NCBI GenBank assembly: GCA_965285935.1
Contig: OZ260661.1
Span: forward strand, 18,786,001-18,850,000
DNA from: Ophelia neglecta
Taxonomy: Eukaryota
Length of the DNA stretch: 64,000 bases
Reading direction: 5' to 3'
Below are positions 18,220 to 64,000 of the stretch, one piece after another. The translations under genes and the position numbers were made by a program. The notes below the pieces were generated by a model. The model saw nothing but the letters and a program-made list of their open reading frames with translations. It did no database searches and was not told where the DNA came from. Every line of letters begins with the position of its first letter. The stretch's first letter is position 1.

Positions 18220-18334
18220 ATATATTCTACGTTGCAACGTTAAAGTTCGTATCGATCTTATGTATGAATGGCGTACATACTTGTGTAGTAACTATACAGG
18301 AGATATAAACTTGTGTTTCAAATTTAGGGATGAC

Positions 18335-31656: not shown

Positions 31657-31900
31657 GGCATACTGGAAAAGCTGATACGAAATACCAGATACGAGACGCA
31701 GATACGAGATGCGAGGTGTTTAAAACGTAGCCATATGGACTAGGTAAGGGTCAGGGTGAAGGGTTAAGTAAGGAATGATTTAGTTAGGTTGCTAGCTTAA
31801 CCCTACCCCTAACCCCGTCATAACCCAACACTATCTTATTTTTTCGTATCTGTGTATCTCGTATTTCCTTCGTATTTCGTATCAGGTTTTCCAGTATGCC
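31657..31900. mobile_element. MITE with 9-bp TSD (Mutator/MULE-like)
   Basis: TIR ggcatactggaaaagctgatacgaaatac... / ...gtatttcgtatcaggttttccagtatgcc; TSD GACAAATAA at 31648-31656 and 31901-31909. Confidence 0.88.
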
Positions 31901-31914
31901 GACAAATAAGGATA

Positions 31915-32260
31915 AATTGTAGAAAAAAAAGAATTCGCAGCATTAAAAATAGTCCTTACATTTCACTCAACTTGCCTATATTCAAACGACTGAATCTTCT
32001 TAAATTAGAGGATATCTATAAACTCAATTTACAGCATGTATCAGGAATTCATACTTATGATACTAGAAATAAATATTACCAAAGTGTAGTTAAAAACGAA
32101 ATTCGAGTATTTCTATTTTAAATGAAGCACCAGATCACATTAAGAATAAGGTGCATACATATAGCTTGCATGGATTTGCAAATCATATAAAGCATTTCTT
32201 AATAAATTGCTATTCTGTCGATTGTTATGTAGCAAACTGATATGTTTGTCAAAGATGTAA
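31915..32260 (+). pseudogene. 3'-end remnant of a CR1/L2-group (Crack/Daphne-like) LINE ORF2
   Basis: Translates to KKRIRSIKNSPY...PIFKRLNLLKLEDIYKL...HTYDTRN and KVHTYSLHGFANHIKHFLINCYS..C..N*YVC, resembling L2/CR1-group C-termini. Confidence 0.65.
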
Positions 32261-35200: not shown

Positions 35201-37480
35201 GTAAGTTGCGTGTGTTCTTAACCAGCGAACCATTTTCTGATGGCGTATAACATACTATCTGGCACACAATAGTATAAAAAGGTAAGCTGATTTTACTTTT
35301 TTTAATGCGTGATTATTATCTAGTGCACACTTTACGGGCAGACTACTCAGTTATACAATTTCCCGTAAATATGATTACACAGGCATCATTTTAAAATGGC
35401 TGTATGATAAATTATTATACTGCATGATGAGAAGGTTCACACGTAAAAAGATCTACAAAAGTAAGCATCCCATCAACAGATGATGCTTTCACTTTGTCAT
35501 ATTCTGAAGTCTCAATCAATTTCCAGGATTCATATACAAATTTGTACTTCAGAACTGTCTTTGTTATGTGAAAGAATACATCCTATCCTAAAATCATCCT
35601 AGTAAGCAGAAAGTAGGCATGCCATCAACAGATGATGCAACAACTATAATATTACTTAATGAACATGAACTTAATAACAGTAAAATGAATCTCAATTATT
35701 GTAATATATAATTTGGCTATGAACTGACATAAAATTAGACTTTTATGAACCTGATGTATCTTTGCAAATTTGACTCTGAGATATAAAATTGTCTAACACA
35801 CATAGACTAGTATCTTATTCATCTAATATAACGAGACATGAAAAGACAAGAAAATATCAAACTAACTCATAGCAATTCACATGAATCATGAATCATATGC
35901 ACAGTTTTCGGCATCCACTCTTAAGACTTATAGTTTATCGGAAGATGCCAAAATAATATGATAACCTATACTCTGAACAAATCTAGCAATAGACCCATTT
36001 AAATATTGCAAAATGTGAAAACTTGTAATTTAGAACTAACTGGAAGCTCAAATATTGCAAATCAAAATGATGCAACTAGCATCAAATTTGTCCATATACA
36101 ATACAAACAACATTTGGAGGCAAATATTTTATTCAGCTATACTTTTAAAATTACGCCAAGTGCCAGTCGAGCACAAAATAGTCTTATCTGAACATGACAA
36201 ACTGAAATCTTGTAAGTTGAATACAAAATAAACTTTCTTTTAAAGACGACCAAAATTTTAAACACTTAAAAAATTATTACTAGCCATTAAGTTAACATAT
36301 CATTTTAACAGGACATTTAGATAATATAGAAAAACAACTTCACGGAATACTTTTCTTTGCTAGTTCTAAAATAAGTGGAGGGATTTCACCGTCACCACTC
36401 CAACCTTTGACTTGTGCTAATATGTTTGGTATCTTGTCAAAGTAGTCCAAATCGTTTTTTCAGAATCTTCTTTTTCTATCCATATAACTTCTATTGTTTC
36501 GATATATTTTGGTACATGCGTAACTCTGGCTAAAAAGTTTGTTGATGTTCCCAGTACCTTACTTTTACATGGTCCAATCACAACTATGTCTCCGACACTA
36601 ATTAAAGCAGGGTACTTTTTAACCGGGCTGAAAATTTAAATGAAAACACCTGTAAAGAAAATTTACTTTTAAATGCTGAGTACAATATAGTTAAATAATG
36701 GAGAAATCTCCACTGTCTAGTGTATAAACATATCTAACAAAGAAATAATGACAAATATATCTGCATATATTTACTAGCCATTATTTCGAGATATTGTTAA
36801 TTTTAACAGCACGTGTTGCACCAACACAATTACCGAAATCTGAAGCACAAGCAAACAACATTTTTAGTAATTATTTTCTGAAGAAAAATGACAAGTTTGA
36901 TTATCATACATGATCCAATGTGGGGTAAAATTATTTATTACAGATACTTACTATTTTTCATCATCTTCATCATAATCAGCTAACTGCTTTTTCTTAGCCC
37001 TGGCCTTAGCCCTAGGCTTGGTAGCCTTGGGCTTACTAGTAGCTGTGGATTCAACAGGCTTCTCTGCCAAATCTTTTTCCGACGTCTTCATTTGAGCGAT
37101 AGTCCTGTACAAGACTTCCCTCGTTTTTCTATGTTCTCCTAGTTCCTGCTGAAGTAAACAAAGAAAGGTTTTTGTGATAAAAACCTGATGTCAACAACGT
37201 CCTTATTATTCTTTTTTTAAAACTAATATGAACCATTACTTACGTCTCGTTTCTCCTAGATGCTTTTAAATTCTTCATCTTTTTTTTCAGTCCACGTTTC
37301 ATTTCCTCCAAGATTTCCTTATGCTTCATTTCCTCCAAGGCTTTCTGATGTTTCATTTCCTCCAAGGTTTTCTGAGAGAGAGCAGCTTCCTGTCAACAAC
37401 AGCTTACATATAACGGCCAAAGAAATTGATTCCACAGGCATCATTTTAACTCTACAATTTGTTTCATTATCGTCTTATTA

Positions 37481-37818
37481 GGGACGGACCATTCAATATC
37501 TGGGGGGGGGGGGGGCGACAAATTTAAAAAAAAAATTGTTTGTTTCTGGTTATGCATAAAAAAAATTGTTTGTTTCTGACTCTGGAAAAATTAAATTGTT
37601 TAGTCTGATATTTTCTTTAAAATTTTTTTTTTTTTTTAAAGTTTGATCAAGGCTAGGGAAAAAATATTTGACAGAGATTTGTTAGAAAAAAAAATTGTTT
37701 GCTTCCCAGATAGGAAAAAATAAATTGTTTGTTTGTCCAAAGCTAGAAATTTTTTTGTTTCACTAGAAAATATTTTGTCCCCCCCCCCCCCCCCCCCAAA
37801 TATCTTATGGTGCGTCCC
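37481..37818. mobile_element. Tourist-like MITE (intronic)
   Basis: gggacggaccatt...atggtgcgtccc with TTA TSD. Confidence 0.92.
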
Positions 37819-39453
37819 TTATGTTAAAAGCGTAACAAAACAAATTATATAACAGAATATGTAAAGGGTGTTTAGGTCCCGAGTTGTTACAAGTGAAAGA
37901 AATACAAGTATTCCTCATTCAGGTAGTTTTTCATTGGCTATTCCAAGCATTTGGTTTAATATTACAGTACACAGTCAAAGTCAGCTAATTTTGAGATACA
38001 TTATGATTAATGTGATCACTTTGATTTCGAAACTTACTAAACATTGCACCAATGTACTTAAAATATGGTCCTTACTTGCTGATCACGCTTGCCAGGCTTG
38101 TTGCCAAGGTTGTGACGTTCAATCCGCTGTTCTATCCACTCCGGTTCATTTTCTGGAGGGTAATCTGAAGTGTTAGTGCCCTTCCTCTTTCGCTTATTAC
38201 TATGTTTTGTACTATCACTGGCCACATTACTGGCACAAGAGTTAGCTTCATCATCCTGAAGGACTTGGTGTATCTGCTGCTAAGACACAAAAATCAAAGA
38301 ACACGTTAAATATAAAGATGTAATCAAAAGAAAACAAATGATGCCACTGTCATCAAATTTTTTCAATTATAATCATCATGTTTAGGTTTAAATGTCTCAA
38401 ATCTTTGGCAAACAAACGTGTCACTTGCTAAACTGTGGCAAACGGCTCAGTTTATATCAGTTGCCTTCTAAATTAATTAACGCATACCTCAAAACTGTTA
38501 GATATACCAAAGCATGTAACTATCATGATATGATCGAATAAAAGATACCTTTAGGTTACTCTTGTCTCCTGTTTTTATGAATTGATCAAGCTGTCTTTGG
38601 AACTGGGCTGAATTGTCACGTATAGTTGTCCTTAAGTCCCGGAATGAGGAAGCAGTTACTTTGTTAGCTGCCAAGTATGGCTCAATGGCAGCAAAATTCT
38701 CCTCACTGAAACGGGCCAATAGCATATGATTCTGGAGACGTTGAGTTTCATATCGCTTCTTTCCCTGAAGTTCCTTCTTTTCCTTTGGAGTAATTGTCTG
38801 CATTTTCTTCTTTTTAATATCACTGTCTGCCCCCTGTGGAAAAAGTACACATTTACAGTCAGTTAAATCTAACAAATTAATATAAAGTTTAAAGAAGCGC
38901 TGGGGTGGGCATACAACTGTTTTGGTTTCAGATGACCATGCTACATGCATTGATTCCAAATTGGAACATTAAAAAATGTTTCAAAATAATAATACCAGTA
39001 AATTTGATATTAATAGCATCTGCAAATTGCAAAAGTAATCAAAACATAAAATTATGCAATAATATATTCATTATTTAAGCTATTTTCATAAAAGTTCCTT
39101 TTGCGGTTGCTATGTATAAAAAATGTACATACTGCCACATTTAAGGTCCGGTAGATGATCTTGTTGTATTCAGTCATGCTGGTTGATTCAGACTTTGGAT
39201 AATTTTTCATAATTCGCCGAATGACTTTTATAATTTCCAGGTCAGTCATAGCTTTATGGACCTCATCTTTCAGGTTCTCTCGCATTGAGAGTGTTTATGC
39301 CTCTATAAGGCTGAGTCCTTCATACACATTGGCAGGTATTGTGGGGTATCTGTTTGAACCATATATTTGTCCCTGATTTTGCTGATGGCTGCAACTCTGT
39401 GGTTTCGTCAACCACTACGTTTATATGCCGCTTTATGCTGTCTTCTACCTTTA

Positions 39454-39582
39454 GGGACGGACCATTCAATATCTGGGGGGGGGGCGACAAATTTTTTTAA
39501 AAAAATTGTTTGTTTCTGGTTATGCATAAAAAAAATTGTTTGTTCCTGACTCTGGAAAAAATAAATTGTTTGTCTGATATTT
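39454..39582. mobile_element. Truncated Tourist-like MITE in the ParB-like exon
   Basis: Left TIR only; the right part and ~55 bp of exon are deleted relative to copy 2 (53619-54016). Confidence 0.88.
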
Positions 39583-40243
39583 CCTCTGCAAATGCCCAGG
39601 GTCCAGGCATCTCAACCCATACAGGCCCCAGTGTACTCCCGAGAACGAGGGAAGACGTCTCAATCTTTGGCTTGGCCTCGACCAGCCCCTTTTCTTTCCT
39701 GACAACAACCTGAACAAGCAAACAGTGCAATTCAATTGGTAAAATCCACATAGAATACAAACTTGGACACAATGATTTCTTCTCATCGGTTTGTTCCATG
39801 AATTTGGTAAGTTCCATATTGACTCGAAAACGTGAGACGTATTCATAGCCTAAATCGGTTGTTCTAGATACAAAATACCTTATTAATAAATTTGATAATT
39901 AAATCAAAATTAGTATACATTAATGGTTCACGTGTCATGGTATGCAGAATATATATTGATTTGCTGATTGATATACATGTTTATATAAAATGGAAGGTTT
40001 AATGTATCTTTCATTATTTAAAAACAATGAAATTACTCACGTCTTTGTCATCATTATCTTCTGAAAAATCATAGATGCCCAATATTTCACCAGAGGTTCC
40101 TGCAACCATACAATCATTTTGCAAAAAAAGTTGGGCCAGTTAGAAAAGAGGATTATTTCTAGCACAGCAACCGTTTGATATCGTATTAAATTATGTAGTG
40201 AAGCGGAAAATGGTAGCAAAGAGAATTTAATAAGCAAATTACT

Positions 40244-42310
40244 AGTATTCGTAAAATGATGCTACTGAAATCATTATTCAACCAGCCCTAAAAGGTATCA
40301 TTCAACTCACATTAGTCACAGCCAGTTGTCCCTTGCCTGATTCTCCTATGCGTGAAGACATAGTGCTGCTAGTGCTCTCTTCATCACTGCGCTCTTCCAT
40401 CTTGACTCCTCTGTCTGCACTCGTCTGAAAGTAGCAATCGTCTCATTGGTAATCATTATGCCATTTCCAGATGTAGCTCATTTACAAACACTAGTTGGGG
40501 GTTGATACTTTTCCGCTGTTATCCGCCATTAAACTTTAGCTGAATATTGAATGTTTCTATTGAATCGATTTAAACAAGATTTTTTCTCCTTCAATAACAA
40601 TGGCCGGTATAGATCTACACCACAAGTCTTGGTTAATTTGCTGTATTGTCATTATTGAGCCTTCAGAATCCAAATATATTACATATAATTGCAGGCCTAG
40701 ACATTTGTGCCAAATTGTACATATAAATAAGGGAATGCAGGTCGATATTACAGACACTAGTGCAAATTTATAAAACCACCCCCCACCCCCACCCCCTGCC
40801 ACGAATCGGCTTTCTGGTCTGACCGAACAGATGCACCAAGTGGTACCCCGGGACACCCTTATTTGTGGGGTATGCCGTGTTTGCAGTGTTTCATCATTTC
40901 AATGCATCAAATCCCGTTGTTTAATTAAATGCACTTACTAATCATTTGTTGTCCTGGCCCCCCACACCCGGGACTTACTATATGGGGGATTTACTGTTTT
41001 GGCTGGGGTAATTTGAGGGAGTTCCCTTCACCTTGGAGGAATGTCTACATTATAAATTGGTGCATGTAGCTTCACAGCATGCAGCCTGGTTTGTGCACTG
41101 GCTACGCCTCAGCGTAGGCATTACTTGCCGGTACTGCTGTTCTTTGAGGATATATATATATACATATATACGATAATATAGTCTCCTGGGTGGGTAGGTG
41201 GGGACAACAAATGAATAGTTAGTGTATTAACTGATTAACGAGTGTTGAATTTCACTTTAAAATACCCAAAACAGGTTTTATTTTGGCCAATAGTGGCTAA
41301 TATTTGGCATTCTATAGAGAAAAATCTTATTTGAAAAAGTTTTGCAGCTTTACGAAACAATATTATAGTAAATTATCTGATTCTAAATAATAAACGTTTC
41401 ATCATTTATCGGCTACACTATAGGCTACGGATTTTGCAGCAATTTTTTTTATAAATTATCAGATTATTGTATAGACCCATAGAATCTAAGTGTAAAATGT
41501 AATGCACAAAATTGACCAATTCACGATCAATACCTGCCTATACAGTATATATACTGCCTAGTTTTATCACGTAGGGTCGCATATGATTTCTTTCAGGCCT
41601 TAGCAAATTAATTGATCAATAGTATTCGTAAAATGATGCTACTGAAATCATTTTTCAACCAGCCTTAAAAGGTATCATTCAACTCACATAAGTCACAGCC
41701 AGTTGTCCCTTGCCTGATTCACCTATGCATGAAGACATAGTGCTGCTAGTGCTCTCCTCATCACTGCGCTCTTCCATCTTGACTCCTCTGTCTGCACTCG
41801 TCTGAAAGTAGCAATCGTCTCATTGGTAATCATTATTCCATTTCCAGATGTAGCTAATTTACAAACACTAGTTGGGGGTTGATACTTTTCCGCTGTTATC
41901 CGCTATTAAACTTTAGCTGATTATTGAATGTTTCTATTGAATCGATTTAAGCAAGATTTTTTCTCTTTCAATAAAAATGGCCGGTATAGATCTACACCAC
42001 AAGTCTTGGTTAATTTGCTGTATTGTCATTATTGAGCCTTCAGAATCCAAATATATTACATATAATTGCAGGCCTAGACATTTGTGCCAAATTTTACATA
42101 TAAGTAAGGGAATGCAGGACGAAACAATATTATAGTGAATTATCTGATTCTAAATAATAAACGTTTCATCATTTATCGGCTACACTATAGGCTACGGATT
42201 TTGCACCACATTTTTTATAATTTATCAGATTATTGAATAGACCCATAGAATCTAAGTGTAAAATGTGATGCACAAAATTGACCAATTCACGATCAATACC
42301 TGCCTATACA
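40244..42310. repeat. Internal direct duplication including the putative first coding exon of the ParB-like gene (40244-~41540 vs 41621-42310)
   Basis: agtattcgtaaaatgatgctactg...gggaatgcagg and gaaacaatattatag...cctgcctataca both repeated; the second copy lacks ~0.6 kb from the middle. Confidence 0.9.
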
Positions 42311-44531
42311 TGGTAGTCACGCCCCTGAGGCCCCCTTGGCACAAGTATTAAAACATGGTTCTATTGTATTCCACTGCTTTACGGTTACGCTATCAGGCCA
42401 TGGACTGTCAAATAAAGCACGTCTGTCACGGTGGTCGCACACACAGAAAGATCACAACAAGCTGACAAACGGGCCCCTTGACATTTTCATGCGCGCCCAC
42501 CAGATCAAGAAAGTAGGCCTACGCCTATTCTTGTATTCTTTTTATCATAACCTGATAACTGGCCGAGTGCCTTGGCACCGCATATTTTACACACTACTGA
42601 ACTGCCTTCTTCGTGGTCACAGGGTTGCCAAGTTCGCGGGAAACTTTGCAGGCTTTTGGTCATTAGCAGGCATGCCAATTTGGCACAAGTTTTAATATGC
42701 CTGACCCTTGCTAAAACCTACCTGTCAGTTCATATCACTCGATTCTTTCCTACGGTTTATGGTTTTATCAGTGATTATTCTACAAACATATAAAGAATTA
42801 AAGAAAAAAATTAAAGCCTACCTTGATTGAACACTAGGAACTGAACAGCTGAAACACGTCCTGAGCTGCTGAGATGCGGACACATACGGTAGGTTATAAA
42901 TACGCCTACTCAGCTGATACTACGGCATGTGGCAGTGTGTACCAAGTCACCAGGTCACACGGAAGTTCCAAATATGTGGACGAGTTCAACTCCTTTCCTG
43001 GTAAATTTGGTCGCTGACCACATTGTCGAACGGCTCTTGACTCGTGCCACCAGAAAAGGTACCTTAAGGGTCCAGACATGGAAAATGAGATTTTGTCAGA
43101 AATGAAATCTCCAGGTTTCACTGATTTCAAATATATATAGTTTATGGGGTCTATTTAAATTTTCAGATGTAGAATTTGGATGATTTTTGAATGATGTTTG
43201 ATCTCAATGATTGATTATTTCACTGCTTTGATTAATTTGGACCCCTGTACCCCTCTAGTACTGAATTTTGTGGCGGAATTTTCAATGAATATGAACATGT
43301 TTAATCAATTTGATATATCTTTGGCAATATTTGATCAAGACTTCTATTATTTTCCATGGGGACATCTAACACAGTAAGGATGTGAACAGTGACATCACAG
43401 AGGCCAACCTGCCTGGTTGCCATGGTAACCAAGGCCCAGAATACTTAAAAGTCACATATTTTATTGTTTTAAGCTGATTTTTATTGTTTTATGTATTATT
43501 ATTTATAAATATTTTACAGCAAATTTCAGAAATGTGTTTTTGGCAACAGTTAGGGTAGGAAAACACCTAGATGGGCACTAGAGGGTCTATACCATGAGGG
43601 CTGAAAGTAGAATGAGAAAGGAATTCTGCAAAGTGCCAGGAAAAGTCTGCAGTAATTCAAGAAATTTGCAATGAATATGCATATTCGTATAGTATACTGT
43701 ATGTTCCTCCTGGTGTGGCAAATTAACATACTTTTACAGAACATGCACCATTAGATGGGGCTTGAATACAGTGACATCACACAAGGCAACCCGCATGGTT
43801 GCCATGGCAACCAGGATCCAAATCCATAAAAATCACTAGTTTTGCAACAATTTTGCACAGAAAGCAATGTTATCTTAGTTCAGATGGCATTAAAAATGAA
43901 AACAATCACAAAATAAGTAGGAAAACATGCCTTATTGTTAAATTTAATATGAGAAGTGGCAGTGGGGGCAGAGGCCAGAACTAGACTGCTCAGCCCTGAA
44001 AGTGGCTGGAATTTCTTTCAGGTTGTCATGGAGTATAATTAGAATACCTATTGTGAATTTGTATATATATTTTTCTGCTGCTATGTTTCTGCTGGATGTA
44101 TTTTACTGCAGGCTTGCCTAAAATGAGGTAGGCTATTGGAATTGAGAATAATGATATTGTCTACAATGAATTGTGTGGTTGTCATGGTAACCATGGCCAT
44201 GCATCCCCGAAAATATATATCAGTTCCCTCTTTTTGGACCTAACAGTTCTGTTTTCACAAGATTTAGCAAATCAGAAGGAGATATTGCCAAACAATATAT
44301 ACATTGTATTGGTTTATTTGACTGTGACCTAAGGCCTTGTGCCCGGATACATACATAAATACATTTAGTAAATGATGGTTACCACTTACATAGGGCTTGA
44401 GGTTTATAAATATCTGTAGTTACATGTATATAGCCTCTGACAGGTTTCACAAAATACATCTAGAGTCTATTCACCATTTTTTGAGAGAGTAAAAACTTTC
44501 ACACATTTAATACAATGTCCACAAATGTAGT

Positions 44532-47500
44532 TTAAGGGGCTGGGCACATAACATCTTTGTTTGCTGATGCAAAGAATGGTCTCAGCTTGTGAAATCTGTA
44601 TTCCTTCCTGTCTTGTGACAGGCCTCCTGGGTGAACAGTGGCTGGCTTGTCCTGAAGTAGGCGTTCAATTCTGGCATTCCTCTTCAGAAGGCGCCTAGTT
44701 ACCGGTTCTGAATCCGGGCCTTGGCTACACAGAACAAAACCAGGTTCGATGTCAGGCCCGAAGGAAAAATGGTGATACGCTGTGATCCCTGAGAAAGACC
44801 ATTAACAAGGGTTTAGAGAGAATCATTATGTCTCAAAAACGAAAGTTTTGAGACATACTGTTTTTGTCATTATTATTTTTTTTTATTTTTTTTTTTATTT
44901 TTTTTTTCTTCGGTGTTTTTTCGTAACAGTTTTCGGGGTGAAGACATGGTCCGGGGGCCCTGAAATTTTAGCGGTCCTCATGTCTTGGAAGACGTGAGCG
45001 AATCTCCCTCTGGCAAAAATTGGCGCCTAGCCAAAACGAAATGGCGGCCACTTTGTCGTTTTTTATACTTTTGCTGTCTTGACAAAACCGCTCAACGAAT
45101 TTCCGCGAAACTCGCGTGAGACAAGCATATAGTTTGCCCGACCTCAGCCCTGAAAAAAAATGGCCGACGAAATTTAACCTTTGGAAATTAATTAAGATTT
45201 CATAATTCAAAGTTCAAACTGCATTAAGTAAACTAAGCAAAGAAATGAATACATAAGCATGGATATAATGTATGCAAATCCTACTATATACAAATGTATT
45301 TATTCAAAAAGAAATTTCAATAATGAAAGGAATAAACAAACACACTTTTCTGGATAATGCTTTAAATAAATATACACCTTTTAGAGGCAAAAAATACTTC
45401 TCCAGGAATGGCTTCCACAACTTCCAAGGGAAATCTCTCAAGATGACTGCGCTGTTCCCCTTGTCACCATGAGCAGTGAAGCAGCTTTTTAGATCTTCCA
45501 CCGTTTCAATATCATTGCTGCAAATCATTAAACATGTGATTTAGTGTGGACTAAACCTTCCGAATATATTTACTTTTTAATAATGATTATACTATTTAAT
45601 GATTATACAGAGGGTTTCTTGTCAAACTGATGTTTAAAAGCTTTAAGGAAATACAGTGCTGTTTGTAATAATCATACTTTCTATACTTCCGTTTTCCCTG
45701 TCCAAAGCCTGCATCTACCAAACACCTAGTGTGCCCTGCAACCTGGAAATGCATGGACATCTTTCTATTCCTCCTCTGTAAATTTTTCATACACAAATAT
45801 GCCAGTGTGTATCTGTTCTTGTTTTGTCCTATAGAAATAGAGGGATAAAAACCAATTACTCCCTTAGAAAGTGGCTGCATCCAGTACATGTATTCATACA
45901 AGTGAACATTGGTTAAGTGAGCATTTTCATATGCCTAACCACATCCATCAAACTCAGAATTGAATGATTATATTTCTAACCTGTACAATTATCTGCATGA
46001 AGTGACAGCTCCTTATTATCGTCATCATACATGCTGAGATGGTGGTCAAGAATGCTCAATATAGTGTCTGGGCCGTGGGTTCCCCCTCCATCAGGCTGTA
46101 GTGACTCACTCTCTTCTATGAGGTAATTCATCTGTTTGTAGCATCCCTCAGATGCCACACCAAATACCTATGTTGAAGTGGAATATTCAATATTCACAAC
46201 TTAATGGTTAATCAATACAAATGCTGAAATATTCCTGATAAATTCATAATAATGTATTTTTTATACTATTTGAGAAATAACATTCTTATATAGTCATGAT
46301 AGAAATGGAAACAAACCTGCACTTTTATTGGATTTTCAAAATAAAGAGCACCTCGCTGACGGACATGTTGTGGGAGGGTACAAGGTTGTGCATAGTCAAA
46401 TGTCAGATGGTTTGAAGCACCATCCCTAGCTCTGTTCACCTGTGAAATTGAGAGATTGCTGCTGTCATTATGAACCATTACTTCATAAAAATGATTTTAA
46501 TTTCAAATCAAAAACAAAGCATGTGATGGAAGTTATATAGATTAAGCAGTACATGGCAGGCCATTTTTTTTACTTTATCAATGCAACCTTGGAATACATG
46601 CCTCATCATTATAGAAAATCCTTTCTGTTGATGCATCCTGCATATGTTTGTACAGGTTGTCTGCCAGAGATTTTTTCCTCATCTGTTTCTGCTTCCTGAA
46701 AATGTAATTATGTTCTCACACCTTGATATATTTTAATATCATTAAATGTATATTAATCATAAATTGTATCCTTCCTATACAGTTATATCACTGCCATCCA
46801 AGCCTGAATGCACAAGTTGTAAATTGGCACCTAATAATTAATTGCGAATGATGTGTGGGGAGAGTAGGATTGGAAGTTTTTAATTTTTTTAAACCCGCAA
46901 CTTGCAAGGCTTTGCAAAGGTATAAAATGCAGGAACTGGGGAAGCTTATATATGGGTTGGAGGGGGACAAAAACCAGTTCCCCCACCCCCAATCACCCTT
47001 TCAAATGGAATATGCCTTAATGTAAAATTAATAACTCATATTAACAGCTGTCCTTAGCGTCTCGCATTTGGTACAACAATCCATCCTTTGGGGGGAGATC
47101 TGTATATGTGGACAAACAGACTGCCATACATTCTGAAAGGCTGTGCGCTCAAACTTTTTTCTCTGTGCATCTATGCAGGCCTACAAAAAGTGTACACAGT
47201 GAATCGTTAAATTATGACTCATCTTCTGCTGGAAAGGAAACTTGTCTTTAAGGATAATCTATTAAAGTATATTAATCTTCACCTCTTTGTATTTTTGGTG
47301 GACTCTCAATTTGTCATAACCAGTTGGGAGGTGAACTTTGGCTAGCTCAGAGGTGTGGCCTGTAGTTGGCTGCTGCAGTCCCTTCGTTTTTGCAAAATTC
47401 TTCAGGAATTCAACAATAAATGTACAGTCTTCAAATGTCATGGTATGCCAAGGTCTTCTATTTTTGTTCCCATGAGTTCTGGGAATGCAACCTGAAAAAA

Positions 47501-51678: not shown

Positions 51679-52007
51679 GGGACGGACCATTCAATATCTG
51701 GGGGGGGGGGGGCGACAAATTTAAAAAAAAAATTGTTTGTTTCTGGTTATGCATAAAAAAAATTGTTTGTTTCTGACTCTGGAAAAATTAAATTGTTTGT
51801 CTGATATTTTCTTTAAAATTTTTTTTTTTTTTTAAAGTTTGATCAAGGCTAGGGAAAATATATTTGACAGAGATTTGTTAGAAAAAAAAATTGTTTGCTT
51901 CCCAGATAGGAAAAAATAAATTGTTTGTTTGTCCAAAGCTAGAAATTTTTTTGTTTCACTAGAAAATATTTTGTCCCCCCCCCCCCAAATATCTAATGGT
52001 GCGTCCC
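51679..52007. mobile_element. Tourist-like MITE (duplicate of 37481-37818)
   Basis: TIRs and TTA TSD. Confidence 0.92.
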
Positions 52008-53618: not shown

Positions 53619-53960
53619 GGGACGGACCATTCAATATCTGGGGGGGGGGGGGGGCGACAAATTTTTTTAAAAAAATTGTTTGTTTCTGGTTATGCATAAA
53701 AAAAATTGTTTGTTCCTGACTCTGGAAAAAAATAAATTGTTTGTCTGATATTTTCTTTAAAATTTTTTTTTTGTTTTTAAAGTTTGATCAAGGCTAGGGA
53801 AAAAATATTTGACAGAGATTTGTTAGAAAAAAAAATTGTTTGCTTCCCAGATAGGAAAAAATAAATTGTTTGTTTGTCCAAAGCTAGAAAATTTTTTGTT
53901 TCGCGAGAAAATATTTTGTCGCCCCCCCCCCCCCCCCCCAAATATCTAATGGTGCGTCCC
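53619..53960. mobile_element. Tourist-like MITE, complete, in the ParB-like exon
   Basis: TIRs and TTA TSD at 53616-53618 and 53961-53963. Confidence 0.92.
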
Positions 53961-56900
53961 TTAGTATTGTTATTGGCCGCATCAAAATGGGTTGTGATTT
54001 TAACTCCTTGTAAACCCTCTGCAAATGCCCAGGGTCCAGGCATCTCAACCCATACAGGCCCCAGTGTACTCCCGAGAACGAGGGAAGACGTCTCAATCTT
54101 TGGCTTGGCCTCGACCAGCCCCTTTTCTTTCCTGACAACAACCTGAACAAGCAAACAGTGCAATTCAATTGGTAAAATCCACATAGAATACAAACTTGGA
54201 CACAATGATTTCTTCTCATCGGTTTGTTCCATGAATTTGGTAAGTTCCATATTGACTCGAAAACGTGAGACGTATTCATAGCCTAAATCGGTTGTTCTAG
54301 ATACAAAATACCTTATTAATAAATTTGATAATTAAATCAAAATTAGTATACATTAATGGTTCACGTGTCATGGTATGCAGAATATATATTGATTGGCTGA
54401 TTGATATACATGTTTATATAACTTGGAAGGTTTAATGTATCTTTCATTATTTAAAAACAATGAAATTACTCACGTCTTTGTCATCATTATCTTCTGAAAA
54501 ATCATAGATGCCCAATATTTCACCAGAGGTTCCTGCAACCATACAATCATTTTGCAAAAAAAGTTGGGCCAGTTAGAAAAGAGGATTATTTCTAGCACAG
54601 CAACCGTTTGATATCGTATTAAATTATGTAGTGAAGCGGAAAATGGTAGCAAAGAGAATTTAATAAGCAAATTACTAGTATTCGTAAAATGATGCTACTG
54701 AAATCATTATTCAACCAGCCCTAAAAGGTATCATTCAACTCACATAAGTCACAGCCAGTTGTCCCTTGCCTGATTCTCCTATGCGTGAAGACATAGTGCT
54801 GCTAGTGCTCTCTTCATCACTGCGCTCTTCCATCTTGACTCCTCTGTCTGCACTCGTCTGAAAGTAGCAATCGTCTCATTGGTAATCATTATGCCATTTC
54901 CAGATGTAGCTAATTTACAAACACTAGTTGGGGGTTGATACTTTTCCGCTGTTATCCGCCATTAAACTTTAGCTGAATATTGAATGTTTCTATTGAATCG
55001 ATTTAAACAAGATTTTTTCTCCTTCAATAACAATGGCCGGTATAGATCTACACCACAAGTCTTGGTTAATTTGCTGTATTGTCATTATTGAGCCTTCAGA
55101 ATCCAAATATATTACATATAATTGCAGGCCTAGACATTTGTGCCAAATTGTACATATAAATAAGGGAATGCAGGTCGATATTACAGACACTAGTGCAAAT
55201 TTATAAAACCACCCCCCACCCCCACCCCCTGCCACGAATCGGCTTTCTGGTCTGACCGAACAGATGCACCAAGTGGTACCCCGGGACACCCTTATTTGTG
55301 GGGTATGCCGTGTTTGCAGTGTTTCATCATTTCAATGCATCAAATCCCGTTGTTTAATTAAATGCACTTACTAATCATTTGTTGTCCTGGCCCCCCACAC
55401 CCGGGACTTACTATATGGGGGATTTACTGTTTTGGCTGGGGTAATTTGAGGGAGTTCCCTTCACCTTGGAGGAATGTCTACATTTTAAATTGGTGCATGT
55501 AGCTTCACAGCATGCAGCCTGGTTTGTGCACTGGCTACGCCTCAGCGTAGGCATTACTTGCCGGTACTGCTGTTCTTTGAGGATATATATATATACATAT
55601 ATACGATAATATAGTCTCCTGGGTGGGTAGGTGGGGACAACAAATGAATAGTTAGTGTATTAACTGATTAACGAGTGTTGAATTTCACTTTAAAATACCC
55701 AAAACAGGTTTTATTTTGGCCAATAGTGGCTAATATTTGGCATTCTATAGAGAAAAATCTTATTTGAAAAAGTTTTGCAGCTTTACGAAACAATATTATA
55801 GTAAATTATCTGATTCTAAATAATAAACGTTTCATCATTTATCGGCTACACTATAGGCTACGGATTTTGCAGCAATTTTTTTTATAAATTATCAGATTAT
55901 TGTATAGACCCATAGAATCTAAGTGTAAAATGTAATGCACAAAATTGACCAATTCACGATCAATACCTGCCTATACAGTATATATACTGCCTAGTTTTAT
56001 CACGTAGGGTCGCATATGATTTCTTTCAGGCCTTAGCAAATTAATTGATCAATAGTATTCGTAAAATGATGCTACTGAAATCATTTTTCAACCAGCCCTA
56101 AAAGGTATCATTCAACTCACATAAGTCACAGCCAGTTGTCCCTTGCCTGATTCACCTATGCATGAAGACATAGTGCTGCTAGTGCTCTCTTCATCACTGC
56201 GCTCTTCCATCTTGACTCCTCTGTCTGCACTCGTCTGAAAGTAGCAATCGTCTCATTGGTAATCATTATTCCATTTCCAGATGTAGCTAATTTACAAACA
56301 CTAGTTGGGGGTTGATACTTTTCCGCTGTTATCCGCTATTAAACTTTAGCTGATTATTGAATGTTTCTATTGAATCGATTTAAGCAAGATTTTTTCTCTT
56401 TCAATAAAAATGGCCGGTATAGATCTACACCACAAGTCTTGGTTAATTTGCTGTATTGTCATTATTGAGCCTTCAGAATCCAAATATATTACATATAATT
56501 GCAGGCCTAGACATTTGTGCCAAATTTTACATATAAGTAAGGGAATGCAGGTCGATATTACAGCTTTGCAGCTTTACGAAACAATATTATAGTGAATTAT
56601 CTGATTCTAAATAATAAACGTTTCATCATTTATCGGCTACACTATAGGCTACGGATTTTGCACCACATTTTTTATAATTTATCAGATTATTGAATAGACC
56701 CATAGAATCTAAGTGTAAAATGTGATGCACAAAATTGACCAATTCACGATCAATACCTGCCTATACATGGTAGTCACGCCCCTGAGGCCCCCTTGGCACA
56801 AGTATTAAAACATGGTTCTATTGTATTCCACTGCTTTACGGTTACGCTATCAGGCCATGGACTGTCAAATAAAGCACGTCTGTCACGGTGGTCGCACACA

Positions 56901-57498
56901 CAGAAAGATCACAACAAGCTGACAAACGGGCCCCTTGACATTTTCATGCGCGCCCACCAGATCAAGAAAGTAGGCCTACGCCTATTCTTGTATTCTTTTT
57001 ATCATAACCTGATAACTGGCCGAGTGCCTTGGCACCGCATATTTTACACACTACTGAACTGCCTTCTTCGTGGTCACAGGGTTGCCAAGTTCGCGGGAAA
57101 CTTTGCAGGCTTTTGGTCATTAGCAGGCATGCCAATTTGGCACAAGTTTTAATATGCCTGACCCTTGCTAAAACCTACCTGTCAGTTCATATCACTCGAT
57201 TCTTTCCTACGGTTTATGGTTTTATCAGTGATTATTCTACAAACATATAAAGAATTAAAGAAAAAAATTAAAGCCTACCTTAATTGAACACTAGGAACTG
57301 AACAGCTGAAACACGTCCTGAGCTGCTGAGATGCGGACACATACGGTAGGTTATAAATACGCCTACTCAGCTGATACTACGGCATGTGGCAGTGTGTACC
57401 AAGTCACCAGGTCACACGGAAGTTCCAAATATGTGGACGAGTTCAACTCCTTTCCTGGTAAATTTGGTCGCTGACCACATTGTCGAACGGCTCTTGAC

Positions 57499-59330
57499 TC
57501 GTGCCACCAGAAAAGGTACCTTAAGGGTCCAGACATGGAAAATGAGATTTTGTCAGAAATGAAATCTCCAGGTTTCACTGATTTCAAATATATATAGTTT
57601 ATGGGGTCTATTTAAATTTTCAGATGTAGAATTTGGATGATTTTTGAATGATGTTTGATCTCAATGATTGATTATTTCACTGCTTTGATTAATTTGGACT
57701 CCTGTACCCCTCTAGTACTGAATTTTGTGGCGGAATTTTCAATGAATATGAACATGTTTAATCAATTTGATATATCTTTGGCAATATTTGATCAAGACTT
57801 CTATTATTTTCCATGGGGACATCTAACACAGTAAGGATGTGAACAGTGACATCACAGAGGCCAACCTGCCTGGTTGCCATGGTAACCAAGGCCCAGAATA
57901 CTTAAAAGTCACATATTTTATTGTTTTAAGCTGATTTTTATTGTTTTATGTATTATTATTTATAAATATTTTACAGCAAATTTCAGAAATGTGTTTTTGG
58001 CAACAGTTAGGGTAGGAAAACACCTAGATGGGCACTAGAGGGTCTATACCATGAGGGCTGAAAGTAGAATGAGAAAGGAATTCTGCAAAGTGCCAGGAAA
58101 AGTCTGCAGTAATTCAAGAAATTTGCAATGAATATGCATATTCGTATAGTATACTGTATGTTCCTCCTGGTGTGGCAAATTAACATACTTTTACAGAACA
58201 TGCACCATTAGATGGGGCTTGAATACAGTGACATCACACAAGGCAACCCGCATGGTTGCCATGGCAACCAGGATCCAAATCCATAAAAATCACTAGTTTT
58301 GCAACAATTTTGCACAGAAAGCAATGTTATCTTAGTTCAGATGGCATTAAAAATGAAAACAATCACAAAATAAGTAGGAAAACATGCCTTATTGTTAAAT
58401 TTAATATGAGAAGTGGCAGTGGGGGCAGAGGCCAGAACTAGACTGCTCAGCCCTGAAAGTGGCTGGAATTTCTTTCAGGTTGTCATGGAGTATAATTAGA
58501 ATACCTATTGTGAATTTGTATATATATTTTTCTGCTGCTATGTTTCTGCTGGATGTATTTTACTGCAGGCTTGCCTAAAATGAGGTAAGCTATTGGAATT
58601 GAGAATAATGATATTGTCTACAATGAATTGTGTGGTTGTCATGGTAACCATGGCCATGCATCCCCGAAAATATATATCAGTTCCCTCTTTTTGGACCTAA
58701 CAGTTCTGTTTTCACAAGATTTAGCAAATCAGAAGGAGATATTGCCAAACAATATATACATTGTATTGGTTTATTTGACTGTGACCTAAGGCCTTGTGCC
58801 CGGATACATACATAAATACATTTAGTAAATGATGGTTACCACTTACATAGGGCTTGAGGTTTATAAATATCTGTAGTTACATGTATATAGCCTCTGACAG
58901 GTTTCACAAAATACATCTAGAGTCTATTCACCATTTTTTGAGAGAGTAAAAACTTTCACACATTTAATACAATGTCCACAAATGTAGTTTAAGGGGCTGG
59001 GCACATAACATCTTTGTTTGCTGATGCAAAGAATGGTCTCAGCTTGTGAAATCTGTATTCCTTCCTGTCTTGTGACAGGCCTCCTGGGTGAACAGTGGCT
59101 GGCTTGTCCTGAAGTAGGCGTTCAATTCTGGCATTCCTCTTCAGAAGGCGCCTAGTTACCGGTTCTGAATCCGGGCCTTGGCTACACAGAACAAAACCAG
59201 GTTCGATGTCAGGCCCGAAGGAAAAATGGTGATACGCTGTGATCCCTGAGAAAGACCATTAACAAGGGTTTAGAGAGAATCATTATGTCTCAAAAACGAA
59301 AGTTTTGAGACATACTGTTTTTGTCATTAT

Positions 59331-59362
<32 letters not shown>

Positions 59363-62300
59363 CTTCGGTGTTTTTTCGTAACAGTTTTCGGGGTGAAGAC
59401 ATGGTCCGGGGGCCCTGAAATTTTAGCGGTCCTCATGTCTTGGAAGACGTGAGCGAATCTCCCTCTGGCAAAAATTGGCGCCTAGCCAAAACGAAATGGC
59501 GGCCACTTTGTCGTTTTTTATACTTTTGCTGTCTTGACAAAACAGCTCAACGAATTTCCGCGAAACTCGCGTGAGACAAGCATATAGTTTGCCCGACCTC
59601 AGCCCTGAAAAAAAATGGCCGACGAAATTTAACCTTTGGAAATTAATTAAGATTTCATAATTCAAAGTTCAAACTGCATTAAGTAAACTAAGCAAAGAAA
59701 TGAATACATAAGCATGGATATAATGTATGCAAATCCTACTATATACAAATGTATTTATTCAAAAAGAAATTTCAATAATGAAAGGAATAAACAAACACAC
59801 TTTTCTGGATAATGCTTTAAATAAATATACACCTTTTAGAGGCAAAAAATACTTCTCCAGGAATGGCTTCCACAACTTCCAAGGGAAATCTCTCAAGATG
59901 ACTGCGCTGTTCCCCTTGTCACCATGAGCAGTGAAGCAGCTTTTTAGATCTTCCACCGTTTCAATATCATTGCTGCAAATCATTAAACATGTGATTTAGT
60001 GTGGACTAAACCTTCCGAATATATTTACTTTTTAATAATGATTATACTATTTAATGATTATACAGAGGGTTTCTTGTCAAACTGATGTTTAAAAGCTTTA
60101 AGGAAATACAGTGCTGTTTGTAATAATCATACTTTCTATACTTCCGTTTTCCCTGTCCAAAGCCTGCATCTACCAAACACCTAGTGTGCCCTGCAACCTG
60201 GAAATGCATGGACATCTTTCTATTCCTCCTCTGTAAATTTTTCATACACAAAAATGCCAGTGTGTATCTGTTCTTGTTTTGTCCTATAGAAATAGAGGGA
60301 TAAAAACCAATTACTCCCTTAGAAAGTGGCTGCATCCAGTACATGTACTGTACATGTACAGTACTGTCAGGATAAAAACATCATTTTTATGTTTTATAAA
60401 TGTAAACCAATTTATATTATATAATATTAAATATTAATTTATTAAGACAAAAAAGTATCACTGTACCATTTTCATTCATGTGTGACCTTATATTTCGCAA
60501 CTTCCTCTCTTTAATGTCATATGTTAGACAAAAAAAAGACTTGCAAATATCATCACCCTGAAAACTATAGCAATATCTGCTCCTTTTCTTTCCATTTGTT
60601 TTCTTCAAGGAGCTAGAAGTTAAAATGGAAAAGATGTTATTGCTATGTACTTATCGCTACAAATTAATACTACATTTCATGCCTCTTACTTTAACTACCG
60701 GGTATGTATGGTAACTGTTAACTGTTGAGACCTGCCATATGCCATATGCCATGGAACTTACCCACCTTAAAGAAATGTGATGTTAAAATACAATTCCTTC
60801 GTCTGTTTTATAAAATTGACGATTGTACTATTTATTTTTGGCTCAGTTGGTAACCTTAACTGTCAGTAGGCCATGCTAGCTTGGGACTGCATGTATTCCA
60901 ATAAACTGAACATTTAAAACATACCTTCGAGCCAGAAGAACACCCATGATTAAGGACTCCCTGTGTGATGCTGGTGCAGCCCGAAGATCCTCAACATGGT
61001 TAATAATAACTGACAGATCAGTCTTGTCAACGCATCTTTGTTTGCAACAGCCTTCAATTAAGAACATTGTCAAGGCTTTGTTAATAAAAGGGTAATAAAA
61101 AATAATTATTAATTTGTAGTCTGCAATATTTCCTAGTAGGAAGTAGTGAAATGTGCAATGCAATCATGTCTACAGGTTAGACAGTTATATGTAGGGACAT
61201 GGGTTGGCCCAAAAAAATTAAAATTGACTATTAAAAGATGAACACTACACGTAAACTATATTGAATGAGATTACCATTTACAAAGTCATGCTCTTAAATC
61301 CTTGTTTTTATAAACATAAAATAACAAATCAATCTAAATTACAGCTGATAACCTCACTACGGTAGTATGCCTTTACCTTTCTCTTTTAGCTTATTGTACA
61401 CAGCCTGCAACTCATCCCTGAGAAGATTCCCTTGGCTGCTTTGTGGTGGCTGGTCAAAAGTGACAGAATCTGCATCATGAGGCACTTCATCGTCATTTGC
61501 TTCTTCTTCAACCTCCTCGTCACTGTCCCATATATCAGTATCAGCATTCTCAGGAGAAAAAACCTATTTGAAAATTAAATTTTCAAAATATTGCTTTAAA
61601 ATGCCTATGGATTAAACAGAAAAAAATATTCTAGGGCAGTTTCCATGCTGAGAACAATTTAAAGTACATCTGCTGCGCCTGTATTATGAAGTTCTTCCCC
61701 TACGCCATTAACTTAGTACTGTACTCCAAAAGATTCCACACATAATTTGATAGCAATTAAGCTATTTCAACAGTGATATGTCCATAAACAGATAAATTAG
61801 ATAGGAATTTTCCTAAAATGGAGTGTAGATTGTCTTACTTCATCTGGAATGGCTTGGGAACCTATGGATGATTGGGAACTCTGACTCATTTCGGACACAT
61901 AGGTTATAGTTCTTTGCTCCAGGACTTCGTCTTCACTGGGGGTCTGTTCTTGTTCCCATGAGTAATCGTCATCTTGTAAATTACCTGATAATTTAAAGTA
62001 GAAAACATCATGCTGGACATTTACCTACCTGTGGCTGCTGATTGTCAGCAGAGGGACCTGCTTGCATTAATGGCTAGGTCCTATAGATATTATGAACACA
62101 AGGGAAAGATTTGTACTTAATTTGTGAAGAAATGAATCTGTTGTACTCACTGTCTTCAAGGTCTGTGATCTTCTGCAGAGCTGCCAACACTGCTCCTCTC
62201 TGTCTTGGCCTTACAAAGGTGGCCAAGTATTCGTCCAGGTCTGCATATTGTTCCTGGAATTACAGCATACAATTTGTTATCATATGGAATAATTCCAGAT

Positions 62301-63631
62301 AGCATGGCAAGCTAGCTGGTTTAGGCAATTTTTGCTGCTTTTGATTAATTTACCAAAATTTTATATATCTTGTGGGAACCGAGTTAAAAACTACTTAACA
62401 AAAGTATAGGCCTATAGTGGACACATACTTTGTCATACCGATCACGGCCTTCCTGCAGGGTTAGCCTGGACATCATTGAAAAACTGGGAAACTGGAAAAT
62501 AGTTGAAAATATGCATTATACATTTTTTTTATCTTAAATAGGAGGCTCTTCAAAAGAAGAAGGCACAAGAAAAAGAACACCCCCTCCCCCTCGACCACAT
62601 GCTGCAATAAAAACTGCATGATCATTGTGGCCTTACATAGATCTATGTTTTGGCATGCTGCATGTATCCCTGCCATAAGCTCATCATAAGCCTGACTTTA
62701 GACATTTTATCCATGGCAATGGTGATTTTGATACGACATAGCCCAAGTGACAGAAAAAGATTCACCAAATCAGACTGATGGTTCCAAAACATGAGAACCG
62801 TCAACGTCTGTCCGTCACTGGCCTAATATATTTGATAATCCTGATAAACTGATAAAACGAGCCCCCCCCCCTCCCCCCTCGGGGCCGGGAAGGTGCCATC
62901 GGCCCATTGCTGCATGAGCGATAATCAGATAGATATCTGTTTGGATTTTTCGCTTAATGAAGCAAATTCCATTTAATAACTAGGATCACGGCCACATCAC
63001 ATCATGTTTATCAAGTAAATTTCAACTAAACCACGCAAGTACACGCTATAAACTGATAAACTTCATGAATACGTATAACAGTATAGATCTAAGGTCCTAG
63101 ATCCCGGGTTACCGGTACCTAGCATGCTAGTGCATATTGGCCTACCAGGTTGCCGTATGTCCCAAGATGCATGAAATTGAAGTCAAAAGCGAAGAAAACC
63201 ATTTCAAAAATTATTTATTTATAGGCCTATGTATCTCCCCTTCACTAAATTCGGGTAGCAAACAAAATCACGGCCGAGGACCCCGCCGCCGCAAGGCCGC
63301 CCCAAGCGCCTGAGCACATGCATGTACGACATGAACAAAATGTAGGTCACAGAAGCACCTGCATCAAGACCTGCTGCGCGGGCTTACTCTGCCGAAATTA
63401 GACATGAATTTATAATAAATATATGATACCACTTACCTTTAACAGCTGTATAATCTATAAACCTGCTCCTATTCTATTAAATCTGAGAATAAACACCGAA
63501 ATTCTGCATAACACGCACTCGCAAACAACGACTTGCAAGTTTTGCCGCCACGAATTTCACTGCGTAGACAAAATGACGTCATACCGCAAAATGAGGTCAC
63601 AGAGCTTAAGGTACCTTTTCTGGCGACACGA
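57499..63631 (-). mobile_element. Sola-like transposon, copy 2, with internal deletion of the central transposase exons
   Basis: Same TIRs; sequence equivalent to 45893-47677 is missing at ~60348. Confidence 0.8.
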
Positions 63632-64000
63632 CAAAGAAATAATGACAAATATATCTGCATATATTTACTAGCCATTATTTCGAGATATTGTTAATTTTAA
63701 CAGCACGTGTTGCACCAACACAATTACCGAAATCTGAAGCACAAGCAAACAACATTTTTAGTAATTATTTTCTGAAGAAAAATGACAAGTTTGATTATCA
63801 TACATGATCCAATGTGGGGTAAAATTATTTATTACAGATACTTACTATTTTTCATCATCTTCATCATAATCAGCTAAATGCTTTTTCTTAGCCCTGGCCT
63901 TAGCCCTAGGCTTGGCAGCCTTGGGCTTACTAGTAGCTGTGGATTCAACAGGCTTCTCTGCCAAATCTTTTTCCGACGTCTTCATTTGAGCGATAGTCCT
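63631..64000. repeat. Start of tandem unit 3 (runs off the window)
   Basis: Same TIR|acaaagaaat junction; shares unit-2 variants (cagctaaatgc, ggcagcc). Confidence 0.95.

What the first reader, a model, noticed from the sequence alone, without database searches (positions are those of the whole stretch)
36737..64000. Head-to-tail amplicon whose junction is a Sola-like transposon end: 6.3 kb of flanking ParB-like gene amplified with the transposon
Seen: at least three units, and both visible junctions read ...cttaaggtaccttttctggcgacacg|acaaagaaataatg, i.e. the right TIR joined directly to position 36737 in the last intron of the ParB-like gene (1-2 nt microhomology). The left TIR sits inside the unit (43042 and 57499) and there is no TSD. 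Known: alternative or one-ended transposition of cut-and-paste elements (Ac/Ds, P) produces tandem duplications with one breakpoint at an element end. Inference: a Sola-like end created the first duplication and unequal exchange expanded it, giving a transposon-plus-cargo macrosatellite. I do not know of this being described for Sola elements.
Basis: partly seen in the sequence, partly recalled or inferred. Interest (0 to 1): 0.8.

Follow-up and report, generated by a model that had tools for sequence, protein, structure and literature searches.

The report
Transposon-bridged tandem duplication, three copies
A 6.3-kb stretch of an animal chromosome is present three times in a row with a young cut-and-paste transposon wedged between the copies, but the joints look like host DNA-repair scars rather than transposase products, and the "ParB-like gene" said to be amplified finds no support.

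Summary
The repeat is real in the assembly. It is not an open-ended array. It reads L | A1 (36737-43041) | TE1 (43042-50937) | A2 | TE2 (57499-63633, with a 1.8-kb internal deletion) | A3 (ends 6.2 kb beyond the window) | unique right flank. That is three 6.3-kb host segments and two transposons, with no transposon at either outer border.

The transposon has 27-nt TIRs and a DUF7869 (Sola-like DDD) transposase. It has only four copies in the 762-Mb genome. The two copies outside the array (C7, C9) are ordinary insertions with AT-rich 4-bp (possibly 5-bp) TSDs. One of them was checked against empty paralogous sites.

- **Left joint:** the terminal 6 nt are missing and 3 other nt (TCG) sit in their place.
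- **Right joint:** it lies 0-1 nt from the terminus and has 3 nt of microhomology (ACA).
- **Elsewhere:** there is no TSD, no footprint at L|A1 or A3|R, and no transposon plus A pairing anywhere else.

Best reading: an excised transposon was joined by host repair into the joint of a tandem duplication, and unequal exchange then added one more unit. Classical alternative transposition is not supported. ParB_N was not detected by any of the searches run. Read evidence comes from one sample, probably the assembly's own. The scan holds one similar, unchecked note elsewhere in this genome (s1-735114).

The parts
31105..36736 (.). L, the unique left flank. It is continuous with A1 as in the C3 paralog.
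   Evidence: colinear with C3 across 36737, without indel or footprint.
36737..43041 (.). A1, first copy of the 6.3-kb host segment (6305 bp). It lacks 262 bp of a MITE-like element that A2 and A3 have.
43042..43044 (+). TCG: 3 nt at the left joint that belong neither to A nor to the canonical element end (GAAACA in the C7 and C9 copies). They are identical to the matching bases of the right TIR.
43045..50937 (-). TE1, the full-length element (about 7.9 kb). The transposase exons lie on the minus strand. 50935-50937 (ACA) is shared with the start of A2.
45599..45934 (-). Transposase exon with the QNKN...GHTR..VD motif; it matches DUF7869.
   Evidence: (E 9.4e-5).
45979..46167 (-). Transposase exon ending in the ADNCTG motif (putative second catalytic D).
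   Evidence: aligned to the SDSCAGQNRN motif of another DUF7869 transposase of this genome.
50935..57498 (.). A2, second copy of the host segment (6564 bp).
57499..63633 (-). TE2, the same element with the same two joints. It lacks the equivalent of 45893-47677, which holds the exons with the first two catalytic residues.
60348..60361 (+). 14-nt palindromic filler, templated from the flank, at the internal deletion of TE2.
63631..64000 (.). Start of A3. A3 runs to C1:18856183, 6,183 bp beyond the window end, and is followed by unique sequence.

Best explanation
A young Sola-like (DUF7869, DDD-type) cut-and-paste transposon was excised by its transposase. It was not integrated normally. Instead its slightly eroded ends were joined by host repair to two positions 6.3 kb apart on sister chromatids: the end of A at 43041 and the start of A at 36737. 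The repair was microhomology-mediated or polymerase-theta-type end joining, or run-off copying of the linear element followed by a template switch. The product was L-A-TE-A-R, a tandem duplication with the transposon as its joint. Soon afterwards, unequal exchange between the two A copies added one more TE+A unit. Later TE2 lost 1.8 kb and A1 lost 262 bp. Shown: the structure, the canonical termini, the non-canonical joints and the lack of footprints. Inferred: the excised intermediate, the repair pathway and the order of events.
For: Structure A-TE-A-TE-A-R with unique flanks. Canonical ends and AWWT TSDs come from C7 and C9, and empty sites at C5 and C1 read ...CTGACATTTGTCT.... Both array joints lie within 6 nt and 0-1 nt of the ends of a 7.9-kb element, which points to a free or cleaved element. 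The left joint has 6 nt lost and 3 nt added. The right joint has 3-nt microhomology, and neither flank is AWWT. L|A1 is colinear with the C3 paralog, and A3|R shows no duplicated bases. The same locus carries a clear templated-filler deletion joint in TE2. Divergence: TE1-TE7 0.47%, A1-A3 0.33%, TE1-TE2 0.29%. A2 resembles A3 in its 5' part and A1 in its last 0.6 kb, and the 262-bp character is shared by A2 and A3. Junction k-mers are present in reads at about half the depth of the 4-copy element body.
Against: The canonical termini rest on only two other copies. With a 5-bp TSD the right joint would be exact, so a transposase-made right joint cannot be excluded. The TCG filler is only 3 nt. 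The chimeric pattern of A2 is weak (Fisher p = 0.06), and one site (37825) conflicts with it. No empty allele and no independent individual were available. The reads come from one sample and only as contigs.
Confidence: 0.5

Rival explanations
1. One reading: transposase-catalysed alternative, one-ended or hybrid-end transposition. The element's right end is inserted into the sister chromatid 6.3 kb upstream, giving a flanking tandem duplication, and unequal exchange follows.
For: The right joint lies 0-1 nt from the terminus and is exact if the TSD is 5 bp. The element family is young and probably active, at 98-99.7% identity. The outcome A-TE-A is the kind produced by Ac/Ds and P alternative transposition (PMC3744419).
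Against: The left joint lacks the terminal 6 nt and has 3 foreign nt. There is no AWWT at either joint. There is no TSD relation between breakpoints. There is no element and no excision footprint at L|A1 or A3|R, whereas the reversed-ends model predicts an element starting each duplicated segment. Only a mixed version remains tenable, with the right end transferred and the left end repaired.
Confidence: 0.2
2. Circular intermediate: a circle made of A plus the element (two end-joined joints) recombined with the chromosomal A, as a monomer twice or as a dimer. This would give A-(TE-A)2 in one or two steps.
For: It predicts exactly the observed structure with intact L|A1 and A3|R. The near star-like divergence of A1, A2 and A3 fits a near-simultaneous origin.
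Against: It needs the same two non-canonical joints plus an extra integration step. No circle-specific evidence exists. The A2 mosaic pattern and the A2+A3 shared character fit unequal exchange at least as well.
Confidence: 0.12
3. Assembly artefact: the true locus has fewer units, for example A-TE-A with two alleles (full and deleted TE) chained by the assembler.
For: A 100-N scaffold gap lies 5.6 kb to the left, at 31005-31104. All read data come from one sample and only as contigs. The depth ratio in run X3 is intermediate.
Against: There is no gap inside the array. Three distinguishable A copies and two distinguishable TE copies exist. In run X1 the depths are junction 12.9, TE body 25.5-28 and A 23.3. 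These fit 2:4:3 better than 1:3:2. Even the reduced form would keep both odd joints.
Confidence: 0.1

Closest known systems
Tandem direct duplications made by Ac/Ds reversed-ends transposition in maize (Zhang, Zuo and Peterson 2013, PMC3744419) and P-element hybrid-element insertion in Drosophila (own knowledge)
   Same: A cut-and-paste element sits at the joint of a tandem duplication of flanking host DNA, and one breakpoint coincides with an element end.
   Different: In those cases the joints are exact, they carry the family's TSD logic, and an element or footprint marks an outer breakpoint. Here the left joint is eroded and filled, there is no TSD, and both outer borders are clean.
Capture of extrachromosomal or filler DNA at double-strand-break repair joints, and polymerase-theta-type end joining with microhomology and templated inserts (own knowledge of the field)
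   Same: 1-3 nt of microhomology, small loss at ends, short inserts identical to nearby sequence, and a 14-nt palindromic templated filler in TE2.
   Different: The captured piece is a whole 7.9-kb transposon, and it bridges a 6.3-kb tandem duplication rather than a simple break.
Sola superfamily, especially Sola2 (4-bp AWWT TSDs; Bao and Jurka 2013, PMC3627910; review PMC10741241)
   Same: TIRs, a size of 2-9 kb, AT-rich 4-bp TSDs (ATTT, AAAT), and a D...D...D layout with an H-[GT]-[KR]...VD..F third motif like that of Sola2_DFa-2.
   Different: No Sola profile could be run. The only family hit is Pfam DUF7869, and a 5-bp TSD is not excluded.
Expansion of tandem duplicates by non-allelic homologous recombination
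   Same: A three-copy array in which the middle copy looks like a mosaic of the outer two.
   Different: Support is weak here (p = 0.06).

Membership tests
Sola superfamily of DNA transposons | Terminal inverted repeats | tested here: met
   27-nt TIRs, 93% complementary. The inner 19-mer occurs exactly 8 times in the genome, which equals 4 elements.
Sola superfamily of DNA transposons | 4-bp target site duplication (AT-rich AWWT in Sola2) | tested here: inconclusive
   C7 is flanked by ATTT and C9 by AAAT, and empty sites confirm a true insertion. A 5-bp reading (CATTT, CAAAT) fits equally well. TIR symmetry favours 4 bp. So do the AT-rich tetramers flanking a second DUF7869 family.
Sola superfamily of DNA transposons | Sola-type DDD transposase | tested here: inconclusive
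   Exons carry FDYAQ, ADNCTG/QNKN and GHTR..VD motifs. Pfam gives only DUF7869. The layout resembles the Sola2_DFa-2 sequence printed.
Alternative transposition products (reversed-ends, sister-chromatid, hybrid-element) | Both rearrangement joints exactly at element termini | tested here: not met
   Left joint: the canonical GAAACA is absent and TCG is present. Right joint: it ends at ...CACGACA, 0 or 1 nt short of the terminus.
Alternative transposition products (reversed-ends, sister-chromatid, hybrid-element) | TSD signature at breakpoints, and an element or footprint at an outer breakpoint | tested here: not met
   No TSD. L|A1 is colinear with the paralog. A3|R has no duplicated bases and no element.
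ParB/Srx (ParB_N) domain gene | Match to the ParB_N profile or to the DGxHR-type motif | tested here: not met
   PF02195 has no match in the whole genome. 18 ORFs of the segment give no ParB hit. The six-frame motif scan of L and A returned two loose matches, neither in a ParB-like context. The 156-aa ORF has 0 homologs. The C3 paralog has frameshifts and stops in two of five ORFs.
End-joining with microhomology or templated inserts | Short microhomology, small terminal loss, inserts copied from nearby sequence | tested here: met
   ACA overlap at 50935-50937. 6 nt lost and 3 nt gained at 43042-43044. 14-nt palindromic filler at 60348-60361. The pathway itself is not testable with these tools.
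NAHR-expanded tandem array | Middle copy is a chimera of the outer copies | tested here: inconclusive
   12 A1-odd sites lie up to 41757, and 3 A3-odd sites lie from 42429 on. Fisher p = 0.063. One site conflicts.

The most novel reading that the evidence does not exclude
This DUF7869/Sola-like transposase itself can place its two ends at sites kilobases apart on sister chromatids. That would create kilobase-scale 'target duplications' as a regular, if rare, outcome, and would seed gene-sized tandem arrays in this genome. A second, unchecked note of a host-TE-host-TE array elsewhere in the genome (s1-735114) would then be part of a wider pattern of TE-bridged amplification.
Probability: 0.12. 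Interest if true: 0.6.

Novelty: new member of a known kind. Interest (0 to 1): 0.33.

Why it matters
It is a clean natural example of a DNA transposon sitting at the joint of a recent tandem duplication. It comes with enough outside copies and empty sites to read the joints base by base. It shows that a transposon end at a breakpoint does not by itself show transposase-made rearrangement: here the scars point to host repair of an excised element. That bears on how often failed transposition seeds copy-number change. It does not open a new class of mechanism, and the amplified segment carries no demonstrable gene.

Tried and rejected
- **ParB-like gene:** no support from any of these tests.
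  - A search of the genome with Pfam ParB_N found nothing.
  - Pfam scans of 18 ORFs gave no ParB hit.
  - The six-frame motif scan gave no convincing ParB/Srx motif.
  - The ESM Atlas gave no hit, and the exhaustive HMMER search of the 156-aa ORF gave 0 hits.
  - The codon-position test against the C3 paralog was largely neutral. Only one of the five ORFs shows a third-position excess. Two of the five have stops or frameshifts in C3.
- **36737 as the border of an older repeat:** rejected. The C3 paralog runs through it.
- **The element carrying A as cargo:** rejected. The C7 and C9 copies have no A, and the C3 paralog has no element.
- **NAHR between two flanking elements:** rejected. The array begins and ends with A.
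- **Canonical insertion into a pre-existing A-A joint:** rejected. There is no TSD and the ends are eroded.
- **TSD length from a second DUF7869 family:** only right ends were obtained.
- **Sola classification from the literature:** the original description is not held, and no paper mentions DUF7869.
- aligning the window exons to the Sola2 protein printed in a supplement, because that sequence has no reference.
- **Read depth:** only contigs of one sample were available, so copy number is only roughly supported.
Full report
**Observation**

A self-comparison of the window shows head-to-tail repeats with start-to-start spacings of 14,198 and 12,696 bp and 98-99.4% identity. Inverted repeats of 27 nt, 93% complementary, lie at 43042-43068 and 50909-50935.

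The window is C1:18786001-18850000 of a 762-Mb, 223-contig assembly. I extended the sequence to the right. The full structure is:

- L (unique)
- A1, 36737-43041
- TE1, 43042-50937
- A2, 50935-57498
- TE2, 57499-63633
- A3, from 63631 to 6,183 bp past the window end
- R (unique)

After A3 there is no transposon. The match to the A-end/TE-left query stops exactly at the last base of A, and unique sequence follows. So the array is closed, with three A copies and two TE copies.

**The breakpoint at 36737**

A paralog on contig C3 (84-94% identical over its segments, mostly 91-94%; 95% around the breakpoint) runs without interruption or indel through 36737. L-A is therefore the ancestral order. 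36737 is a true rearrangement breakpoint, not the border of another repeat, and no excision footprint is present there.

**The transposon**

The inner TIR 19-mer occurs eight times in the genome, which equals four elements: two in the array, one on C7 and one on C9. They are 97.6-99.7% identical. TE1-TE2 differ by 0.29% and TE1-TE7 by 0.47%, and TE9 is the outgroup.

Minus-strand exons carry a transposase with these features:

- a CxxC stretch
- an FDYAQ motif
- an ADNCTG|QNKN motif split by an intron
- a GHTR..VD motif

One exon matches Pfam DUF7869. The motifs align to an intronless 1064-aa OTU+DUF7869 transposase of another family in this genome. The genome holds at least 34 DUF7869 matches.

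The D...D...D layout and the third motif resemble the Sola2_DFa-2 transposase printed in a supplement of PMC3627910. Sola elements are described as DDD transposons with 4-bp TSDs (PMC10741241), and Sola2 TSDs as AWWT (PMC3627910). I could not run a formal comparison because that sequence has no reference here. 'Sola-like' is therefore plausible but not established.

**True termini**

The C7 and C9 copies are ordinary insertions. Both begin GAAACATGCC and end CACGACAC. C7 is flanked by ATTT on both sides and C9 by AAAT. Two empty paralogous sites (C5 and C1) read ...CTGACATTTGTCT.... This shows that the C7 copy is a real insertion with a duplicated target.

The duplication is 4 bp (AWWT), or 5 bp if the preceding C is counted. 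Two observations favour 4 bp:

- Both ends have 11 nt outside the conserved CCAGAAAAGG core, so a 4-bp TSD keeps the TIRs symmetric.
- The right-end flanks of a second DUF7869 family are ATAT, TAAT, ATTT and ATAT.

**The array joints**

- **Left joint** (identical in both units)...ggctcttgac, then TCG, then TGCCACC.... The canonical first six bases are absent and three other bases stand in their place. Because TE9 and TE7 share GAAACA and TE9 is the outgroup, the array's end is the derived state. Three changes in six bases cannot be ordinary divergence at 0.5%. TCG equals the corresponding bases of the right TIR, which could mean a short templated fill-in. With 3 nt this is only a hint.
- **Right joint:** ...CACGACA followed by AAGAAAT. 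The bases ACA (50935-50937) are shared by the element end and by 36737-36739. The terminal C of the 4-bp model is missing.
- **Targets and footprints:** neither joint lies at an AWWT target and there is no TSD. A3|R (...ctcttaac then gatgg) shows no duplicated bases.
- **TE2 deletion:** the internal deletion of TE2 is sealed by a 14-nt palindromic filler copied from the adjacent bases. This is a typical alternative end-joining scar. TE2 thereby lost the exons with the first two catalytic residues.

**What this excludes**

A canonical insertion at either 43041 or 36737 followed by alternative transposition would leave at least one exact joint with its TSD. It would also leave an element or a footprint at an outer border, as in the maize Ac cases (PMC3744419). 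None of these is seen.

Unequal exchange between two flanking elements is excluded because the array starts and ends with A. Cargo transposition is excluded because A and the element are not paired anywhere else.

**What this suggests**

Both breakpoints lie within 6 nt and 0-1 nt of the ends of a 7.9-kb element. That is very unlikely unless the element's ends were free, meaning the element had been excised or cleaved by transposase.

The simplest account is that host repair joined an excised element to two positions 6.3 kb apart on sister chromatids. Alternatively, the linear element was copied to its end before synthesis switched back by the ACA microhomology. Either way the product was A-TE-A. 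A mixed version, with the right end transferred by transposase and the left end repaired, remains possible if the TSD is 5 bp.

**Second step**

The three A copies differ at 26 sites: 12 A1-odd, 9 A3-odd and 5 A2-odd.

- A2 agrees with A3 through 41757, which includes the 262-bp MITE-like piece that A1 lacks.
- A2 agrees with A1 from 42429 on.

This is the pattern expected if A2 is the crossover product of an unequal exchange between the two original copies. The support is weak (Fisher p = 0.063), and one polarised site conflicts. Divergences place the steps close together: A1-A3 0.33%, TE1-TE2 0.29%.

**Is it an assembly artefact?**

Only three runs hold the junction. All come from one sample, probably the assembly's own, and they are kept as contigs. 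What they show:

- A 116-nt contig (63604-63719) matches across the TE|A joint without any difference. It has only 27-30 letters on the element side, just under the tool's bridging rule.
- The common element contig ends at 63633, exactly where the four copies diverge.
- The L|A path appears as a loose end at 63631.
- The full-length element path appears at the TE2 deletion.

In run X1 the depths are 12.9 for the junction, 25.5-28 for the element body (four copies) and 23.3 for A. These fit 2:4:3 better than 1:3:2. Run X3 is intermediate. A 100-N gap lies 5.6 kb to the left of the array, at 31005-31104, and there is no gap inside it. I rate an artefact at about 10%. Even a reduced A-TE-A locus would keep both joints.

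**The 'ParB-like gene'**

- Pfam ParB_N finds nothing in the genome.
- Eighteen ORFs from the segment give no ParB hit.
- The six-frame scan of L and A for DGxHR-type motifs returned only two loose matches, neither in a ParB-like context.
- The largest ORF (156 aa, 38501-38968, minus strand) has no Atlas neighbour. It also has no hit among 1.84 billion representative proteins.
- In the C3 paralog, two of five ORFs carry frameshifts or stops. Substitutions are not concentrated at third codon positions except in one ORF.

The segment may hold a lineage-specific or decaying gene, but nothing supports a ParB/Srx domain.

**Comparison and novelty**

The outcome resembles transposon-associated tandem duplications known from Ac/Ds and P elements. 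The joints resemble repair-mediated capture of extrachromosomal DNA. The element is a probable Sola relative, for which I found no report of such an event. Overall this is one more instance of known processes, documented at base resolution in one assembly.

The scan holds one unchecked note of a similar host-TE-host array elsewhere in this genome (s1-735114). I did not test it.

The N run was left untouched.

Noticed in passing
window 11731-18797: Apparently intact BEL/Pao LTR retrotransposon. It has 463-bp LTRs that are 99.8% identical (11731-12193 and 18335-18797) and a 1780-aa ORF with Peptidase_A17, RVT_1, Integrase_H2C2 and DUF5641.
   Followed up: partly
window 4524-6300: Tandem repeat with a 308-bp unit, about 5.8 copies, 88-97% identical.
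   Followed up: no
window 31005-31104: A 100-N scaffold gap lies 5.6 kb to the left of the array. It was left untouched.
   Followed up: no
G000:C1:18868964-18869527 (about 12.8 kb right of the array end): A strong DUF7869 match (206 bits) from a different transposon family sits close to the array.
   Followed up: no
L064-L067 (C2:79.49 Mb, C2:91.33 Mb, C12:29.64 Mb, C9:58.52 Mb): A second young DUF7869 family (99.5% identical copies, over 7.3 kb). Its 1064-aa intronless ORF joins an OTU cysteine-protease domain to the transposase. Its right ends are flanked by ATAT, TAAT, ATTT and ATAT.
   Followed up: partly
window 60348-60361: The internal deletion of TE2 is sealed by a 14-nt palindromic filler copied from the adjoining bases, a textbook templated-insertion scar.
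   Followed up: yes
window 10134-10365, 37478-37821, 53616-53963: A MITE-like element with a long poly-G/poly-C run. The copy in A is complete in A2 and A3 and lacks 262 bp in A1.
   Followed up: partly
window 40243-40745 and 41620-42122: A 503-bp direct repeat inside each A copy, 96.8% identical and 1,377 bp apart.
   Followed up: no
L017 2707-2864 (C7:97170706-97170863): The C7 element copy lies next to a 157-bp sequence that occurs in dense clusters on C2, C5, C7, C8, C9 and C12 at 96-99% identity. This is probably a satellite or a clustered repeat.
   Followed up: no
G000:C3:299216-310577: An 84-94% identical paralog (mostly 91-94%) of window 34952-40340. It carries a 5.7-kb insertion at the equivalent of 38943, and frameshifts or stops in two of the five ORFs compared.
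   Followed up: partly
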